From Wallemia ichthyophaga EXF-994 (lineage: Eukaryota; Fungi; Basidiomycota), in assembly GCF_000400465.1 (NCBI RefSeq), contig NW_008806278.1, positions 232,592-264,591 of the forward strand: 32,000 nucleotides of DNA, read 5' to 3'. The notes under the pieces were generated by a model. That model did not search any database and was not told the origin of the DNA. It saw nothing but the letters and a program-made list of their open reading frames with translations. Positions 5,436 through 27,719 of this stretch are shown one piece after another. The first letter of the stretch is position 1. Every line of letters begins with the position of its first letter. The translations under genes and the position numbers were made by a program.

Positions 5436-6482
5436 ATGTCTGTAGATTACTACGGTTATTCTACTCCAGATGGCAATCCTACCCTATCACATGCAATTGT
5501 CTTTACAGTGCTCTTCGGGATAGCGCTCATAGCACACTGCGTACTCGCTGGGATAACGAAGCAGTGGTGGCTGTGAGTAAAACCCTGCTAAATCGCTCTA
5601 AATCTCAGTAAAACCCCACAGTTACGGCACCATCGTCCCTTTCCTGATACTCGAGACCATTGGATGGGGTGGCAGGTGCGGCGACAATCGGGACGCTTAT
5701 ATCATGCAAATTGCCACACTTATCATCGGTCCTACATTCCTCTCTGCAATGATTTATGTCGATCTTGGTGTCGTTGGCCTGCAGTACGGCCCGAATTTCT
5801 CTATTCTCGGTCCAAGGATGTTCGCTGCTGTCTTCATCACTGCAGACGTTTTCAGTATTCTCGTTCAGGCTGCTGGTAGGCGTTTAACATCCACATAGAG
5901 CCGCGTTTGCTTACGAGTGAATAGGTGGTGGTATTGCATCGTCAGCTAGCAAAAGTATTAACAGGGAGCTTCTCCACACGGGTAGCAATGTGATGCTGGC
6001 TGGTATTGCTATTCAGTTTGCCTGCATTATCTTCTACTCTTACTTTTTACTTGAGTTCGTAGTTAGATACTACAAGAGATGGCCCGTTAGGGCTAAGCGC
6101 CAAGATCCTATCGCTATAGATCCTTTGTCGCAACCCAACCAAAGAAATTTGGCTCTAAGATTGACAATGCTTGGTGCAATGTCATTCCTAATCATTTGGA
6201 GAGGTGAGTATGGCTGTCACTCAGCTCAGAAACACGCTGATTAATTCTCAATCAGGCATCTACCGTTTAATTGAGCTGAAGGATGGCTGGGAAGGCACTG
6301 TAATTAAAGATCAGGCTGCTTTCGACACCAATGATGGTATGCCAATGGTTATTGCTGCCTGGTTGAGCGGTATCTTTCATATAGGGCTACTCACGCCCAC
6401 GACAAACGCCTCATTCTTATCGAGAGGCAAAAAAGGAGGTGCTGATGCTGCCGAGGCTGACGTCAAGGATGAGGTCGCCTAA
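5436..6482 (+). CDS. RTA1-like lipid-translocating exporter, paralog B (4 exons)
   Basis: ATG 5436 (MSVDYYGYSTPDGNPTLSH). Introns 5573-5621, 5876-5924, 6204-6255. Motifs LETIGWGGR, IGPTFLSAMIY, DVFSILVQAAGGGI, MLAGIAIQF, IWRGIYRLIELKDGW, DGMPM. Stop TAA 6480-6482. Confidence 0.9.
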
Positions 6483-6812
6483 TTTTGTACACTACTGTCT
6501 GAAGGATCAGGCAATCTTCTTATCTCTATTTTTTGAATTGTAAACGGAATGCCTATTGCTACATAAGACACTTCATAGATAATTAAAAATATATTCAATG
6601 AGTGACAAGTATTAAATAGGCTTAAATAAGTTTAGTAAATATATACTAATTAAAGTTTAGATTAGTAAATGGAAGAATACTGGAAAAACACCCTTGTACT
6701 TTGAGAAACAAGAATTATTAGTAAAAAAAAGAATTGTCATCAGCATAAAGCAGCTGAACTTAAAAGAAAGTGATAGCAATGACTAAGAATTAGAAGTATT
6801 CGCTGATCCTGT

Positions 6813-9591
6813 TTACTTCTTTTGATTCTTGTTTGACTTGGATGGAACAACGCTAAATGCTTTGCTTCTCCAAGCCTCGCCTTGCTTGACTTGGTCTTCA
6901 TACTTAGCTTGTAAGTTGATCCATCCCTTGCTGTGACCAGCGTCGATCAGCTTTGAGTTGCGGTTGGCAACAATCTTGAACTGTGATGGACTTGGTTTGG
7001 TTGATCCCTTCTCCTTCTTCGAGCTGAACTTGTTCTTAATGATAGAGCCCTTAGTGCTACCCTTATCACCCTTCTTCTCAGACTCTTCCATCTCCTTCTT
7101 GATTTCGACCAACTTCTTGTTGAGTGTTTCAAGACCACCTCTGATACCATCCTCAATTGCCTTGACAATTTGCTTCTTGATGAGATTGGTTGCGAGTGGA
7201 CGAGCTGTCTTGTAGAGAATATCGTGCTTGCTGTCCTTGATATCGAATTTCAGAGTACCAACGCTAGCCTGAACAGACTTGACTTGGAAGACATCCTTGG
7301 TACCACCCTTAACGCTTAGGTGGATCTTAGCGCTGACACCTTTACCACCTAAGAAAACATCTGCAAGACCAGCATCTTGTACCTTGAATCCAGTTTTCTT
7401 ATTGATGTAGAAGGCGACGTCTCTAAGGTCACATTGAATTTGACCGAGCTCAATCTTGATGTCGTGTTGATGTTCGTTCTTGATCTTTTTGTAAGGTGAG
7501 AATTTGACCTATTGAAAGTTAATTACTAATCTGATATCGATTTTCTAAACATACCCTGTTGTAAGCCTCAGCAATGACGTAATTTGGTAAGAGGTTCTTG
7601 CCTTGAAGGACAAGGTTCTCAATAACAACATCAAGCTTTGGATCAGTGTATTCAATTCTTGGAATTGGAACAGCTCCGACACTTTCAACGACTGGTGGAA
7701 CAATGTGGTCACGGATGTCAGCCCAGAGATGTTTCTTAAAAGTGAATTTGCCATTGGAGTCAAACAGCAAGTCACGGAAAAGCTTGTTGAAGTCTTCGCC
7801 GAACTTTTTGTTGAGTGGGTCCTCACCCATAGACTCAAAGAAGTCAGCGATCTCCTTGGAGAGGTTGTTCTTGACTTGGCCCTTATACTTCTCGCTTTCG
7901 ACAATAGCGCGAATATCCTTACCAAGCTTGTCACCATCGGTATTTGCTTCTTCTTTGAGGACGTAACCAGGTTCGAGAACAAGTCTGCGAATGTATGCGA
8001 TGAGTTTTTCGAACCAGTTAGAAAGTTCCTTGTCGTTTGCGAAAGTCTTGATGAGGTCGTGGAAAGCATCAAAGATCGGTGAAGCGCTGCGTCCGTTAGC
8101 AAATCTCTCCAAGACCGTTCTAAGATCGTTGGCAGCTTGTTTGACATTTGGATCACTCAAAACCGAGGCAGCACTGTCCTTTCCAGTATCAGTAGCCGTC
8201 TTAGCGTGGCCGTAGTATATTTCGAACTCTTTGAAAAAGAATTCGAAAGCCTCCTTCCAGTCTTTGTGCTTCTGGTTTTCGTAAAGAACCTTCTTCATGC
8301 GCTCAATGAACCTTTCGCGACGCTCTTTAGGGAATTTTTCTTCAAGGTGACGTTTGGTGTCCTCAAATTCTTCCTTCACTTTTCCGCGGTATTCCTCTGG
8401 AACCTTGTTCTTGAGATTTTGCTTGCCATTCTCAGCGGTAAATTTGGCCTTCTCCTTACCTACTTCAACCTTCTCTTTAGCGTTGGTCTCTTGAGATTTC
8501 TCTTGACCAGCTTCATTGACAGCCTTTTGAATGTCTGAAACATCCGATTGCTCAGTGGTTTTAGAGTCAACTTTTTTGGCAGTATCGTTTGTGTGCTTGG
8601 CGGCGGTTTCTTTTGCTTCGTCTTTACGCTCTAAAGCAGCCTTCTTGACATCCTCAGCTTTTTCGTGACCTTTTTCGCGAGATTCCTTTGCTTTGTTGAA
8701 CTTTGGCATGTCAAATTCTGGAGTCTCATCAGGGCCGAGTACGCGACCATCCTTGTTTACCCAACCTTGAGAAGCAGGTTCGTCAATCTTGGCAAGCTTG
8801 TCTTCGTTTGGGCGAGCAATTTCAGCAGCCTTTTGAGCAGCATCAGCAAACAAATCTTGGCCAATAATTTTGCAGTCGGTGAGGAGCTTTCTGACTTCAT
8901 TGTTGGTGGCAAGTAATTTGAAAACTGTTTGTAAGTGTTCCAAGGCTGGTGGGTTTGTTAGAATAGAAGCACATAGAAACAATCAAAAGGCGCACCTTTT
9001 TGGCCTTCCTCTTTGGTTCCGTCCTTTGTGAAACCAGGAACAATTTCGTCGCGTTTAGCCTTTGAGTAGTCAACAGAGCCTGTGTGGCGTTAAGTTTGCA
9101 ATTTCCAAAATAGAAACGTGCTTACGAGTTTTGTAGAGGAAGTCTTGAATCTTTTCATCTTTGTTTTTCTCTTGGACGATAGTGTTGGCCTTCGCAGGGT
9201 AAAAAGGTGATTTGATAGAGAATTTAACTCACAGTCATAATAACCCCCCTAGCATCTTGTACCAGCTTCTTTCCTTCTGCGCTGAGCTCGTTTACCTCAA
9301 ATGGTGCGCTTTCAGTGACGTATTTCAGAGTTTCATCGATCTGTGGCGTGTGAGATGAGAACTCGGATAATAACGCAAACAAACCTGGCTGTTAGATGGA
9401 TATCTCGAGGCTTTGAATGCTTGTATTACGCTGTAGAAACGTAGCTTTCTGTCAACATCTGTGCGAAGTGTAAACAAAACACAGTAAACGAAATACACGC
9501 CAGTCTCACCTGATTGTACAACTGCTGGCTTATTTGGTGAGGCAACGCTCATCGCCGGTGGATTGTCTGAAACTTCTTTTCTGACGCTCAT
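6813..9591 (-). CDS. DUF4449-family fungal protein (large, multi-exon; C-terminal beta-rich domain)
   Basis: N-terminus MSVRKEVSDNPPAMSVASPNKPAVVQS|DVDRKLRFYSVIQAFKASRYPSNSQ. Long exon with RERFIERMKKVLYENQKH, LERFANG, VPIPRIEYTDPKLDVVIENLVL, then KFSPYKKI...DVAFYINKKTG...GLADVFLGGKG...LKFDIKDSKHDILYK. Stop 6813-6815. Family assigned from recalled motifs; some internal exon borders not fully resolved. Confidence 0.75.
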
Positions 9592-24670: not shown

Positions 24671-24722
24671 GTAAGTATCACAGCAGCAGCAGCAGCTAAG
24701 CTAAATCTAACTCCCGCTATAG
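24671..24722 (+). other. 5'-UTR intron of the GH128 gene
   Basis: GTAAGT donor at 24671, CTAAC branch motif, TAG acceptor ending at 24722. 52 nt, within the local intron size range. Confidence 0.7.
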
Positions 24723-24757: not shown

Positions 24758-25930
24758 ATGCACTCGAAGATCTTGCTTGCTACTCTCGCCCTTGTCTCAA
24801 CCACATTAGCTGGTAACCACAACGGTGACTTCGCTGCTAGACGTCGTCATCACGTCGGAAAGCGTGACTGGCACCACCATGGTGACCATCACGGAGACCA
24901 TCACGGAGACCATCACGGAAACCATCACGGAGACCACCAGGGTCACCATCACCGCGAAGATCACCACGGCCACCACTGGGATCATGATTGGGATAATCAA
25001 AATGGTGGTAGTCAAGACAACAGCTCCGGTGACTCTACTGCTACTACGACTTCAAGCTGGTCAGCGCCTAGTGCAACCACCTCATCTACACCATCGTCAA
25101 ACACTGGCGGTGCTGTCACTACTTCAACAAACTCGCCAGCGGCTAGTCCAACTACCACGTCTTCAGGCAACTCAGACAGCACTACTAGCGGCACCGAGAA
25201 AGCTGGTCTCGCTTGGCCAAATGGTAACGCAAATGACATCAGTAAATGGTCAAAGGGTAACATAGGCTGGTACTATACCTGGAGTCCATGGCCAGTAGAC
25301 TCAGCTGGTGATCTCGACTTCTACCCTCAACTCTGGGGTCAAAAGCAAGTTTCAACCTGGAACCAACAAAAGAGTAAATTCGCTGAGTGGGGTACTACCC
25401 ACATTCTCGGTTTCAACGAGCCAAACGAAGTGGGTCAAGCAAACATGAACCCAGCTGATGCTGCCAGTTTATGGAACCAAGAGATTGCACAATATCAAGG
25501 TCAATACACGCTCATCTCGCCAGCATGCACTTCTCGCGTTGGAGATTCAGCATCTGGCAGTGACGGTATCAAGTGGTTGCAAGAATTCCAACAAAACGGT
25601 GCAAGCTTCGACGCTGTTGCTGTCCACATCTATGATACTGATTACGAGAGTGTTATCAGCACTCTTCAAAAGTTCCACGATACTTTCCAACTCCCCGTCT
25701 ACTTGACTGAGTACGCTTGCCAGAATTTTGCTGGTGGCGCTCAATGTTCGGAAAGCGAAGTCTGGCAAATGATGGAAAAGACATCTAGCTGGATGGACGA
25801 GCAAGAGTGGATGCACGGTTACTCTTGGTTTGGTGTAATGGAGAACATGCAAGGCGTCAACCAATTGAATCAATTATTGTCCAACGATTCACCAACTGAA
25901 TTGGGATCTTACTACATTCAATCATCATAG
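24758..25930 (+). CDS. Secreted GH128 (Asl1-like) beta-1,3-glucanase with His-rich N-terminal tract and Ser/Thr linker
   Basis: 390-aa intronless ORF: signal peptide, KR site, His-rich tract, S/T linker, then KAGLAW, WYYTWSP, PQLWG, LGFNEPNE (acid/base Glu), AVHIY, VYLTEYAC (nucleophile Glu), YSWFG. Confidence 0.92.
   Translation: MHSKILLATLALVSTTLAGNHNGDFAARRRHHVGKRDWHHHGDHHGDHHGDHHGNHHGDHQGHHHREDHHGHHWDHDWDNQNGGSQDNSSGDSTATTTSSWSAPSATTSSTPSSNTGGAVTTSTNSPAASPTTTSSGNSDSTTSGTEKAGLAWPNGNANDISKWSKGNIGWYYTWSPWPVDSAGDLDFYPQLWGQKQVSTWNQQKSKFAEWGTTHILGFNEPNEVGQANMNPADAASLWNQEIAQYQGQYTLISPACTSRVGDSASGSDGIKWLQEFQQNGASFDAVAVHIYDTDYESVISTLQKFHDTFQLPVYLTEYACQNFAGGAQCSESEVWQMMEKTSSWMDEQEWMHGYSWFGVMENMQGVNQLNQLLSNDSPTELGSYYIQSS
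24875..24946 (+). repeat. Coding 12-bp tandem repeat (consensus CATCACGGAGAC, ~6 units) encoding HHGD units
   Basis: Units CACCATGGTGAC, CATCACGGAGAC x2, CATCACGGAAAC, CATCACGGAGAC, CACCAGGGTCAC read directly. Confidence 0.95.
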
Positions 25931-26194
25931 AGTATTGAGTGCTCTACAGATGCAGGTCGTCTGAAACAAGAATTATAACAGGCTTATAATATTTTGTATT
26001 TACTATGCAATGCTCGCATTTCAAATATTAAGCAATGTGCTCTGTGATGTCACGTGATATTTACTACTGGATTTTGCTTGTAATATTAAGAATATAAGCG
26101 CCTGTAAATCATCGATCGGGTACCTGATACATATGAGCTATTCATCCGTAACTTTCTCCACTACCACCACCACCACTACCATCGAAAAGATAAC

Positions 26195-27719
26195 ATGTCT
26201 AGAATACCGCCCATACCCGGTCAGATATTAACATCGCCGGAACAATGCCATTCATTAAAAAGCTTGGTGCAGGAACTTTGCCAGACGAGATCGAAATCGT
26301 ACGTCGATTCTCAAGTTGAAGACGCAGAGCCTATCTGACTATCAATACACAGTTTTCCTGGATCACAGCCAGTGTCTTTTGGTTGGAAATCACTGCAAGC
26401 GTTGGAAAGAGAAGAGTGGGTCGCATCAAAAGCTCGCGTATAAGCTCACAGACAATCGTTAAAGCTACTGGGTCTGTGAGAAATCTGATGGCGTGCGGTG
26501 TCTACTACTTATCCTGACGAATGGCACAACCAATGAGCAAGAGACGTACTTCGTTAGTCGTCACTCTATACCAACTCGATTTAACCTGACAATGAGTATC
26601 TAAGATAGACAGGAAGAATGTTTATAGACGGATTCGCGGGCTTTACTTCCCAAATTATAAAGATAGCACTTTGCTTACACCTGCTAATAAAACTCTCATT
26701 GATGGCGAATTGGTTATCGACCACGATAAGAAATCTGGCAAGGTAAGCAGGGCCTATCAGTAGCCTCTAAGTAATTTAAGCTAGTTTAGGATAAATTGAG
26801 ATACTTGGTGTTCGATCTGTTGGTGCTCGAAACCGAAGACATTTACAATATGAGATTGGGCTCCAGATATGGTGTGAGTGAACTGTAATAGAAGTGCTTC
26901 ACCTCGACTCATAATTTACAGAGACTGAGATCATGGGTCGTTGAGCCATTTCTGAAGTCACTGGCTAAGAGGGGCAATCCATCTCAGCCATTGGAGTGAG
27001 TTGATATCCCAGCACGCAATCCATATCTCATATGATTATTAGAATCAAGTTGAAGGTAATGGATCTTGCATACGCTATCGACCACGTCTTCAAAACACAC
27101 ATACCAAATCTCCAACATGGCAACGATGGATTAATTTTCACGTGTGTTGAGAGTGGATACGTATTTGGGACTGACTCAAGAATGTGAGCGTTTCAGAAAT
27201 AATTTCATCTTTATGCTGACGTCTATCAGCATCAAGTGGAAAGATCCAAGCGAGAATAGCATTGATTTCAGGATATCGCTGAGGTTCTCAGCGAGTGACG
27301 ACAATACAAATACATGCGACTTTGCAAAGAAACCGCTGTGCGAGCTTCAACAATGGGAAGGTGGTAAACTCTACAATTGGTTTGACAACTGGGATATCTC
27401 AGAAGAAGAGTGGCAAAACTTCCTCAAGGACGGTATAGACTTACACAATAAGATAGCCGAGTTTAGTTGGATGAAAAATGAGGAGAATTGGAGATTTCTG
27501 CGATTTCGAGATGATAAGAATGACGCCAATCATTCGACCGTCGTTGAAAAAGTCACTGAATCAATTGAAGATGGCGTTGAAGCGCACCAGTTGATAAGAA
27601 AGTCTAGTCGTATACGATCAGAATGGAAATCACGAGCGCAGCGGCGAGGTATTGGCATGCCTGTACATTCAAAGTCGCCGCCTCAAAGTACAGCTCAGCC
27701 CTACAAGCTAAATACATAA
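26195..27719 (+). CDS. CEG1: mRNA capping enzyme guanylyltransferase, multi-exon
   Basis: FPGSQPVSF, motif I YWVCEKSDGVR, LIDGELVID, YLVFDLL, HGNDGLIFT, KWK, WRFLRFRDDKNDANH. Stop TAA 27717-27719. Confidence 0.95.

What the first reader, a model, noticed from the sequence alone, without database searches (positions are those of the whole stretch)
24758..24994. GH128 glucanase whose two predicted processed N-termini are both X-X-His (ATCUN-type), followed by a 20-His tract
Seen: the ORF begins MHSKILLATLALVSTTLA|GNHNGDFAARRRHHVGKR|DWHHHGDHHGDHHGDHHGNHHGDHQGHHHREDHHGHHWDHDWD, with 20 His in the 43 residues after KR, ahead of a Ser/Thr linker and an intact GH128 domain. Established: KR is the Kex2 site, and a free N-terminal X-X-His is the ATCUN Cu(II)/Ni(II) site (albumin DAH, GGH peptides). 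Inference: signal cleavage after TLA exposes G-N-H and Kex2 cleavage exposes D-W-H. Maturation would then give a short Arg/His-rich ATCUN propeptide plus a glucanase carrying a metal-binding N-terminal arm. This could be a processing-activated metal scavenging, buffering or oxidative module coupled to beta-glucan remodelling. I know of no description of this for GH128.
Basis: partly seen in the sequence, partly recalled or inferred. Interest (0 to 1): 0.82.

Follow-up and report, generated by a model that had tools for sequence, protein, structure and literature searches.

The report
Histidine-rich arm on Wallemia wall glucanase
The only GH128 beta-1,3-glucanase gene of the salt-loving fungus Wallemia ichthyophaga carries a real, fast-evolving histidine-rich disordered arm after a conserved Kex2-type processing site, but the proposed pair of special copper-binding (X-X-His) ends is not conserved in related species and looks incidental.

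Summary
Window 24758..25930 (+) is one 390-aa ORF. It has a signal peptide, an 18-aa basic pro-region ending in KR, and 20 His in the next 43 residues. A Ser/Thr linker and a complete GH128 domain with both conserved Glu follow. It is protein GME1488_g of Wallemia ichthyophaga EXF-994, the only GH128 in that genome, and its mRNA is about 10-fold higher at 10% than at 30% NaCl.

The N-terminal layout (signal peptide, His/Arg motif, dibasic sites, Ser/Thr linker) is shared by about 35 basidiomycete GH128 proteins. KEX2 cleavage of this region was shown by mass spectrometry in Coprinopsis cinerea. The His tract is new and occurs only in Wallemia-type sequences, with 6 to 20 His. Its core is a 12-bp coding minisatellite, and other strains carry one unit fewer.

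The ATCUN reading is only partly supported. His at +3 after the signal peptide is lost in two of five lineages. KR is NR in the W. mellicola reference. W. hederae would start with CHK, or with Q-x-H after its second KR. Local composition alone gives both X-X-His ends with p = 0.08.

Best reading: a Kex2-processed wall glucanase with a disordered multi-His arm that binds metal or responds to pH. That function is untested.

The parts
24758..25930 (+). Complete single-exon gene for a 390-aa GH128 (Asl1-like) protein. It equals GME1488_g of W. ichthyophaga EXF-994.
   Evidence: ORF list. The exact protein sequence, with gene length 1173 and protein length 390, is in Table S6 of PMC3849046. A 99% identical 386-aa protein is annotated in four other strains.
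24758..24811 (+). Predicted signal peptide, residues 1-18, with cleavage after T-L-A.
   Evidence: Sequence pattern: n-region MHSK, hydrophobic core ILLATLALV, and small residues at -3/-1 (rule-based inference; no SignalP available). TLA|G or AYA|G is conserved in four Wallemia lineages.
24812..24865 (+). Basic, His-containing pro-region GNHNGDFAARRRHHVGKR. RRR lies at 24839..24847 and KR at 24860..24865.
   Evidence: RRRHH is invariant in all Wallemia-type sequences. It is homologous to the AARH..HH..AKKKR motif of Agaricomycete and Tremellomycete GH128 proteins. KEX2 cleavage was shown in a C. cinerea homologue.
24866..24994 (+). His/Asp/Gly-rich tract, residues 37-79, with 20 His in 43 residues.
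   Evidence: It is predicted disordered (pLDDT below 50). A tract of 6-20 His sits at the same position in every Wallemia-type homologue and in none of the other GH128 proteins scanned.
24873..24952 (+). 12-bp coding minisatellite (consensus ACCATCACGGAG, encoding the HHGD/GDHH register), 6.7 copies, variable in copy number between strains.
   Evidence: TRF score 104. The alignment with two other strains shows exactly one 12-bp unit missing there, plus one synonymous CAC/CAT change.
24995..25198 (+). Ser/Thr-rich linker, residues 80-147, 54% S+T, probably O-glycosylated.
   Evidence: Composition. Disordered in the AF2 model. An equivalent linker is present in homologues. Glycosylation is an inference.
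25205..25915 (+). GH128 catalytic domain, residues 150-386. Conserved Glu221 (NEP motif, 25418..25420) and Glu318 (TEY motif, 25709..25711).
   Evidence: Pfam E = 4e-59. Sequence matches to GH128 crystal structures down to E = 3e-23. AF2 pLDDT above 90, and the top Foldseek hits are all GH128 structures. E221 and E318 are invariant in a 47-sequence alignment.

Best explanation
This is the single GH128 beta-1,3-glucan-active cell-wall enzyme of Wallemia ichthyophaga. It is made as a precursor with five parts: signal peptide, short basic pro-region, His-rich disordered tract, Ser/Thr linker and catalytic domain.

Shown:
- The domain layout, the intact catalytic Glu pair, and disorder of residues 1-147.
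- Transcription about 10-fold higher at 10% than at 30% NaCl.
- The pro-region with its dibasic sites is an ancestral feature of this basidiomycete GH128 clade.
- The His tract is a Wallemia-type addition placed right after the dibasic site.
- The tract's core is a 12-bp minisatellite that changes length between strains.

Inferred:
- The signal peptide is cut after Ala18.
- Kex2 cuts after KR36, possibly also at RRR30, as shown for a Coprinopsis homologue.
- The mature enzyme therefore carries the His tract at or near its N-terminus on a flexible glycosylated stalk.

Most likely role of the tract: a multi-His arm that coordinates divalent metals (Zn, Cu, Ni) above about pH 6 and becomes a strong polycation below it. 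The calculated net charge is about +11 at pH 5 and -4 at pH 7. This would hold or modulate the glucanase in the wall. Histidine content is what is kept across the genus. Exact sequence and exact N-terminal residues are not kept. In this allele a Kex2-generated D-W-H end would add one high-affinity ATCUN Cu/Ni site, but that is a by-product of His density rather than the selected feature.
For: - ORF and composition.
- GH128 identity: Pfam E = 4e-59, PDB sequence matches, AF2 plus Foldseek, invariant E221 and E318.
- Species and strain: 99% hit to W. ichthyophaga. The exact protein is GME1488_g in PMC3849046 Table S6, with RPKM 164.0 at 10% NaCl against 15.6 at 30% (log2 -3.39). PF11790 count in that genome is 1.
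- Ancestral pro-region: about 35 homologues have a signal peptide, H..RH..HH..A(K/R)(K/R)R, then 3-8 residues, then (K/R)RC(K/R)xRP.
- KEX2 cleavage of a GH128 precursor was detected by mass spectrometry in C. cinerea (PMC9769878).
- The tract is present in all five lineages at 62-86% catalytic-domain identity. One of these, P0002, is shown to be syntenic.
- Slippage origin: TRF, a 12-bp indel between strains, and H5/H6 variation within cluster 5.
- All length changes are in frame, so the tract is coding.
- Precedent for a His-bearing disordered tail on a fungal carbohydrate-active enzyme that binds copper: AA14 LPMO (bioRxiv 10.1101/2025.11.04.686606).
Against: - No experiment on this protein exists. 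The signal-peptide site is rule-based and the Kex2 cut is by analogy.
- Metal binding follows from general His chemistry and was not tested.
- The neighbouring genes are housekeeping (TPT transporter, DNA polymerase subunit, mRNA capping enzyme, DnaJ), with no metal transporter or regulator.
- Culture medium of this fungus falls below pH 4 in exponential phase. There the imidazoles are protonated and neither ATCUN nor multi-His coordination would work, which favours the polycation half of the proposal in culture.
- Rapid length change would also fit a tolerated, functionless low-complexity insert.
- Cluster 5 is not syntenic, so it may be a paralogue or a more distant taxon.
Confidence: 0.55

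Rival explanations
1. Maturation is designed to expose two ATCUN (NH2-X-X-His) Cu(II)/Ni(II) sites: G-N-H on a released Arg/His propeptide and D-W-H on the enzyme. Together they form a processing-activated module for metal scavenging, buffering or oxidative chemistry.
For: Both predicted termini in this allele have His at position 3 and no Pro at position 2. P4 Val before KR and an acidic P1' residue suit Kex2 (established knowledge of Kex2 specificity, from memory). Four of five lineages have His at +3 after the first KR. KEX2 processing occurs in a homologue.
Against: - G-x-H after the signal peptide is lost in W. mellicola (GDF) and in cluster 5.
- W. hederae gives CHK after the first KR, and Q-x-H after its second KR, where the Gln would probably be cyclised.
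- P0002 gives HGD after its second KR.
- The W. mellicola reference allele has NR in place of KR.
- No non-Wallemia homologue has His at +3.
- Chance expectation is 0.078 for both sites in this allele, and p = 0.13 for 4 of 5 lineages.
- An internal RRR would cut the supposed propeptide.
- The medium falls below pH 4 in culture, which disfavours ATCUN complex formation.
Confidence: 0.12
2. The tract is a functionally neutral low-complexity expansion. Replication slippage of a 12-bp unit occurred in a disordered linker that tolerates almost any hydrophilic sequence. On this view it has no role of its own.
For: It is a perfect-unit minisatellite with a copy-number difference between strains. There is H5/H6 variation within cluster 5. 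Length ranges from 6 to 20 His between species. The region is disordered. The sequence cannot be aligned across species apart from a few anchors.
Against: His-richness at exactly this position persists in all five Wallemia-type lineages, despite catalytic-domain divergence down to 62% and different repeat patterns (HHGD, HDHG, H6). That points to compositional selection. No other GH128 among the sequences scanned has acquired such a tract. His is a rare and costly residue that seldom drifts to 47%.
Confidence: 0.25
3. The tract, or the propeptide, is cut off and acts as a free His-rich peptide. It would be either histatin-like (antimicrobial or metal-dependent) or a signalling peptide like those from KEX2-processed precursors.
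For: C. cinerea releases a stable short peptide from the same region of its GH128 precursor. The His-bearing tail of an AA14 LPMO has antifungal activity.
Against: There is no dibasic or other evident cleavage site between the tract and the linker in W. ichthyophaga. The HHGD repeats are not separated by KR sites, so this is not a KEP-type precursor.
Confidence: 0.06

Closest known systems
KEX2-processed GH128 precursor of Coprinopsis cinerea (protein 365456; Vogt et al. 2022, PMC9769878)
   Same: Signal peptide, dibasic KEX2 sites in a short N-terminal region, then a C-terminal GH128 domain. It belongs to the same basidiomycete clade, which shares a conserved His/Arg pro-motif.
   Different: The Coprinopsis protein has a short non-His peptide between two KR sites and no His tract. 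W. ichthyophaga has RRR and one KR, followed by 20 His in 43 residues. Cleavage here is inferred, not measured.
GH128 beta-1,3-glucanases with solved structures (Santos et al. 2020; e.g. 6UAX, 6UB7, 6UB0, and LeGH128_IV/GLU1 as 6UB2)
   Same: The same (beta/alpha)8 catalytic core and the same conserved Glu pair in the NEP and TE(Y/F) motifs.
   Different: Identity is only 21-29%, and the subgroup was not assigned. None of these structures carries a natural His-rich arm. GH128 subgroup VII members are non-catalytic binding proteins, so activity cannot be taken for granted.
Disordered C-terminal region of the AA14 LPMO from Pycnoporus coccineus (bioRxiv 10.1101/2025.11.04.686606)
   Same: A disordered, glycosylated low-complexity extension on a secreted fungal carbohydrate-active enzyme. 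It ends in a charged, His-containing segment that binds Cu(II).
   Different: The AA14 region is C-terminal, has only four His plus a redox-active Cys, binds with micromolar affinity, and belongs to a different enzyme class. The Wallemia tract is N-terminal, has 20 His and has no Cys.
ATCUN peptides and proteins (serum albumin D-A-H, histatin-5 D-S-H)
   Same: A Kex2-cut D-W-H terminus would have the defining form NH2-X-X-His. As in histatin-5, further His residues follow. (Known chemistry, from memory.)
   Different: The free terminus is hypothetical here. His at +3 is not conserved among orthologues.
His-rich metal-binding repeat proteins (histidine-rich glycoprotein GHHPH repeats, Helicobacter Hpn, His-rich plant dehydrins)
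   Same: Short tandem His-containing units in a disordered region. Charge and metal binding depend on pH. (From memory; HRG and Zn in PMC5372734, listed.)
   Different: There is no sequence homology. The tract-only protein search gave no significant hit. Here the tract is an appendage of a glycoside hydrolase.

Membership tests
Glycoside hydrolase family 128 (Pfam PF11790, Glyco_hydro_cc) | Significant full-length match to the family profile | tested here: met
   E = 4.1e-59, 200.5 bits against a cut-off of 21. Profile positions 1-237 of 237 match residues 150-386.
Glycoside hydrolase family 128 (Pfam PF11790, Glyco_hydro_cc) | (beta/alpha)8 fold like the solved GH128 structures | tested here: met
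   The AF2 domain has pLDDT above 90. The top 28 Foldseek PDB hits are 24 GH128 crystal structures plus 4 chains of 8j3x/8j3y (CBM6E of Saccharophagus degradans), with target TM-scores 0.50-0.88 and E down to 6e-18.
Glycoside hydrolase family 128 (Pfam PF11790, Glyco_hydro_cc) | Two catalytic glutamates (NEP acid/base motif and TE[F/Y] nucleophile motif) | tested here: met
   E221 (GFNEPNE) and E318 (YLTEYAC) are invariant in 47 aligned homologues and align with the same motifs in 6UAX. Their catalytic roles come from published GH128 work, not from a test here.
Glycoside hydrolase family 128 (Pfam PF11790, Glyco_hydro_cc) | Hydrolysis of beta-1,3-glucan | not testable with these tools
   This needs an enzyme assay. 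GH128 subgroup VII shows that the fold alone does not guarantee activity (descriptions).
KEX2-processed GH128 precursors (Vogt et al. 2022) | Signal peptide, then dibasic KEX2 sites upstream of the GH128 domain | tested here: met
   RRR at residues 28-30 and KR at 35-36 lie between the predicted signal peptide and the domain. The equivalent motif is conserved in about 35 homologues.
KEX2-processed GH128 precursors (Vogt et al. 2022) | [quoted passage not shown] | tested here: inconclusive
   W. hederae (KR-CH-KR) and P0002 (KR-CTH-KR) have it. W. ichthyophaga has only RRR...KR flanking HHVG and no second KR after the first.
KEX2-processed GH128 precursors (Vogt et al. 2022) | Cleavage actually occurs | not testable with these tools
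   This needs N-terminal sequencing or peptidomics.
ATCUN (amino-terminal Cu/Ni) motif | His at position 3, no Pro at position 2 | tested here: met
   G-N-H after the predicted signal-peptide cut and D-W-H after KR36.
ATCUN (amino-terminal Cu/Ni) motif | A free alpha-amino group at position 1, meaning the predicted cleavages happen and the end is not blocked | not testable with these tools
   Both cleavage positions are inferred.
   It is lost after the signal peptide in two of five lineages. W. hederae starts with CHK. The W. mellicola reference has NR for KR. It is absent in all non-Wallemia homologues. The statistics are not significant.
KEX2-processed repeat proteins (KEPs) | Repeated core peptides, each flanked by KR sites | tested here: not met
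   The HHGD repeats contain no dibasic sites.

The most novel reading that the evidence does not exclude
Wallemia has turned the N-terminus of its only GH128 wall glucanase into a tunable metal-coordination tether. Multi-His coordination bonds, unlike ionic contacts, survive saturated brine. The minisatellite-encoded tract, longest in the most halophilic species, would then anchor or regulate wall-remodelling activity at extreme salinity. The Kex2-exposed D-W-H end would act as a high-affinity Cu site. This would be a new, processing-dependent metal module on a glycoside hydrolase and a new kind of haloadaptation.
Probability: 0.1. Interest if true: 0.7.

Novelty: new variant of a known kind. 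Interest (0 to 1): 0.4.

Why it matters
If the tract works as proposed, it would be a second example, after the AA14 LPMO tail, of a disordered His-bearing extension giving a secreted fungal carbohydrate-active enzyme a metal-dependent or pH-dependent property. It would also tie that property to wall remodelling in the most halophilic known fungus, whose main salt response is a change in wall thickness. The gene is single-copy, salt-regulated and carries a natural repeat-length series, both across species (6 to 20 His) and between strains (plus or minus one unit). That makes the question easy to test. If the tract proves to be neutral, the locus is still a clean example of a coding minisatellite in a very compact genome.

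Tried and rejected
- A protein search with the pro-region plus tract alone (66 aa) gave 367 word-sharing candidates and none at E <= 0.001, not even the near-identical allele. Composition correction presumably removes the signal. It could therefore not show whether other proteins carry HHGD repeats.
- A profile search with the 47-sequence alignment added few new fungal GH128 proteins and none with a His tract.
- Gene neighbourhood as a clue to metal biology (as with zincophore-transporter pairs): only housekeeping neighbours were found.
- Literature searches for GH128 + histidine-rich, ATCUN + Kex2, ATCUN + fungal secreted proteins, and histidine-rich + glycoside hydrolase + disordered found nothing on point.
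- A six-frame scan of the window for other His-rich stretches (6 or more His per 20 residues) found no comparable tract: the three other hits are short, weaker stretches, so a window-wide compositional quirk is not seen. The whole proteome could not be scanned.
- Docking of the propeptide onto the catalytic groove was considered as an inhibitory-prodomain idea. AF2 leaves residues 1-147 unstructured with pLDDT below 55, so there is no support.
- An intron hiding the tract was considered and rejected. The published gene model is a 1173-nt single exon, and all tract length differences within and between species are multiples of three.
- Assignment to a GH128 subgroup (I-VII) failed. The nearest clade member tested (Cryptococcus P0041) is not one of the crystallised proteins, and the PDB matches are all similarly distant.
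Full report
**1. What is in the sequence**

Window 24758..25930 (+) is an uninterrupted 390-codon ORF. Its parts, in order, are:
- Residues 1-18, MHSKILLATLALVSTTLA. This has the shape of a signal peptide: a basic n-region, a hydrophobic core, and small residues at -3/-1.
- Residues 19-36, GNHNGDFAARRRHHVGKR.
- Residues 37-79, with 20 His in 43 residues. The remaining 311 residues of the protein hold 4 His.
- Residues 80-147, which are 54% Ser/Thr.
- Residues 150-386, which match Pfam PF11790, the GH128 catalytic core, end to end (E = 4e-59).

The core of the His tract is a 12-bp tandem repeat at 24873..24952, with 6.7 copies.

**2. Whose gene it is, and whether it is expressed**

The best database hit is a 386-aa protein of Wallemia ichthyophaga, 99% identical. 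Four accessions from other strains share that length. The exact 390-aa sequence is printed as GME1488_g in Table S6 of the genome paper for the type strain (PMC3849046). That table gives:
- Gene length 1173 nt.
- RPKM 164.0 at 10% NaCl against 15.6 at 30% NaCl.
- log2(30%/10%) = -3.39, FDR 0.

In the table it sits next to an expansin-like protein (log2 -3.34) that the authors discuss as a wall-loosening candidate. The same paper's Pfam table lists one protein with PF11790 in the genome. This is therefore the only GH128 of the species. It is transcribed, and its mRNA falls about ten-fold under the condition in which the wall is reported to thicken three-fold.

**3. The catalytic domain**

- Sequence search of the PDB finds only GH128 entries, with 6UAX at E = 3e-23, then 6UBC, 6UB7 and others.
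- An AlphaFold2 model built on a 47-sequence alignment has pLDDT above 90 for residues 148-390 and below 55 for residues 1-147.
- The top 28 Foldseek matches are GH128 crystal structures, apart from four chains of the Saccharophagus degradans CBM6E entries 8j3x/8j3y.
- Glu221 (GFNEPNE) and Glu318 (YLTEYAC) are invariant in the alignment.

The subgroup could not be assigned. Subgroup VII members are binding proteins rather than enzymes, so activity remains an inference.

**4. The N-terminal region in relatives**

About 35 Agaricomycete, Tremellomycete and other basidiomycete homologues share one layout:
- A signal peptide.
- A His/Arg motif of the type H..A(A)RH..HH..A(K/R)(K/R)R.
- Then 3-8 residues.
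- Then (K/R)RC(K/R)xRP.
- Then a Ser/Thr-rich linker and the GH128 domain.

The Wallemia AARRRHHVGKR is the local version of that motif. This layout has been described. In Coprinopsis cinerea, the peptide lying between the two KEX2 sites of a GH128 precursor was detected and quantified by mass spectrometry, and similar precursors were listed for other mushrooms (PMC9769878). Dibasic processing of this region is therefore a reasonable inference for Wallemia and is not new.

**5. What is specific to Wallemia**

Every Wallemia-type sequence has a His-rich stretch directly after the dibasic site:

| Lineage | Sequence after the dibasic site |
|---|---|
| W. ichthyophaga | 18-20 His |
| P0002, unnamed and syntenic | CTHKRHGDHHDDWHHHNDW |
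| W. hederae | CHKRQ(G/S)HHHDH(G/D)HDHGHNDWH |
| W. mellicola type | DGHDHHGHH.. |
| Cluster 5, from metagenomes | HGHHHHH(H)DW |

The others reach 6 at most, and that is within the ancestral pro-motif. Across the Wallemia arms, the invariant elements are RRRHH, one His column within the tract, a Trp at the tract's end and a few positions (Asn, Gly, Thr) at the start of the linker. The repeat patterns differ (HHGD, HDHG, H5-6).

The length is unstable. The window strain has exactly one more 12-bp unit than two other strains, and cluster 5 varies between H5 and H6. All length changes are in frame. The picture is compositional conservation together with slippage-driven turnover.

**6. Testing the ATCUN idea**

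The chemistry is sound. A free NH2-X-X-His end binds Cu(II) and Ni(II) tightly, and G-N-H and D-W-H qualify. Val at P4 and Asp at P1' suit Kex2 (specificity known from the literature, recalled from memory). The question is whether this is selected or accidental.

- Chance. Shuffling residues within each segment puts His at +3 in 17% and 47% of trials, and in both together in 7.9%.
- After the signal peptide. G-x-H is present in three lineages. It is G-D-F in W. mellicola and absent in cluster 5.
- After the first KR. DWH, CTH, DGH and HGH have His3, but W. hederae has CHK. Four of five at a background of 0.45 gives p = 0.13.
- Second KR. W. hederae and P0002 keep the ancestral second KR. The mature ends would then be Q-G/S-H or H-G-D. 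In C. cinerea the N-terminal Gln peptides were found only as pyroglutamate, which would remove the amine that ATCUN needs.
- Loss of KR. The W. mellicola reference allele, found on 24 contigs, reads NR instead of KR.
- Outside Wallemia. No homologue has His at +3 after its dibasic site.
- Culture pH. The medium falls below pH 4 in exponential phase, where neither ATCUN nor imidazole coordination is effective.

The X-X-His ends look like a consequence of His density.

**7. Most likely mechanism**

The protein is a secreted or wall-associated GH128 enzyme that takes part in beta-1,3-glucan remodelling. It is expressed more when the wall is thinner, at 10% NaCl. It is made as a precursor whose conserved pro-region is removed at dibasic sites in the secretory pathway. 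This step is inferred from homology to an experimentally processed relative.

The mature enzyme then carries a disordered His/Asp/Gly arm on a Ser/Thr stalk that is probably O-glycosylated. With 20 imidazoles in 43 residues, the arm will bind Zn, Ni and Cu near neutral pH. Its calculated charge moves from about +11 at pH 5 to -4 at pH 7. I therefore favour a tether or regulatory arm that depends on metal or pH. Histidine content is the selected property, and the D-W-H terminus is an optional extra site.

The nearest experimental precedent is the His-bearing disordered tail of an AA14 LPMO, which binds Cu(II) with micromolar affinity. The main rival is that the tract is a tolerated, functionless expansion. 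The rapid turnover fits that view, while persistence of His-richness in all five lineages argues against it.

**8. Context**

The flanking genes are a triose-phosphate-type transporter, a DNA polymerase subunit, MRP_L53, mRNA capping enzyme, DnaJ and a PX/RTC4 protein. The same order is seen around P0002. Nothing here points to metal homeostasis.

**9. Novelty and score**

- Known: GH128 itself, and the KEX2-processed N-terminal layout.
- Apparently undescribed: a His-rich, minisatellite-encoded arm on a GH128, though only open-access papers and preprints could be searched.
- Classification: a new variant of a known kind.
- Interest: moderate at 0.4. The feature is real, lineage-specific, salt-regulated and easy to test. 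The most striking part of the original claim, the two designed ATCUN ends, is not supported by comparison with relatives, and no functional data exist.

No step in this work raised a safety concern.

Noticed in passing
window 24681..24696: A perfect (CAG)5.3 microsatellite lies about 60 nt upstream of the start codon, probably in the 5' UTR or core promoter of the GH128 gene. The aligned stretch starts just downstream of it (window 24700), so its variability between strains was not examined.
   Followed up: no
homologues P0006, P0007, P0012-P0014, P0020, P0029, P0033 and others; P0002 and P0104: A single Cys in the motif (K/R)RC(K/R)xRP, just after the second dibasic site, is conserved across Agaricomycete and Tremellomycete GH128 N-terminal arms. 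It is kept in W. hederae and P0002 but replaced by Asp in W. ichthyophaga and W. mellicola. A lone conserved Cys in a disordered arm recalls the Cu-catalysed disulfide dimerisation reported for the AA14 LPMO tail.
   Followed up: partly
proteins P0065, P0066, P0071, P0072, P0074, P0075 and about 25 more: Many actinobacterial proteins of 580-680 aa combine a sigma-70 region (PF04542) with a C-terminal GH128 domain. Examples come from Kitasatospora, Streptomyces, Herbidospora and Planotetraspora. They look like ECF-type sigma factors with a carbohydrate-sensing or carbohydrate-active extension.
   Followed up: no
L004 and L005, gene at 6001..7056: The cluster-5 homologue (62% identical, with an H5/H6 tract) is not syntenic with the Wallemia locus: its neighbours are UTP20, a WD40 protein, Med1 and RTA1 genes. 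It turns up in 48 blocks of metagenome and read-archive assemblies. The organism was not identified. It may be a more distant wallemiomycete or a paralogue.
   Followed up: partly
P0003 and P0105: The ENA gene calls for the W. hederae-like protein carry a 46-residue N-terminal extension ahead of the real Met-His-Ser-Lys start. This is probably an artefact of prokaryote-style ORF calling on a eukaryotic contig.
   Followed up: no
L001 and L002, 1309..7403, against L003: One called gene of 1419 residues merges a TPT/EamA sugar-phosphate transporter with DNA polymerase subunit domains (DNA_pol_D_N, DNA_pol_E_B). In L003 the same region is called as several separate genes. This is probably a fused gene model in the W. 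ichthyophaga strain annotations.
   Followed up: no
window 26123..26218: A short CCA/CAC-rich stretch downstream of the GH128 stop codon reads HYHHHHYH in one frame. It lies in the intergenic or 5' region of the mRNA capping enzyme gene. Of the four stretches in the window that reach 6 or more His per 20 residues, it is the only other one with a consecutive His run.
   Followed up: no
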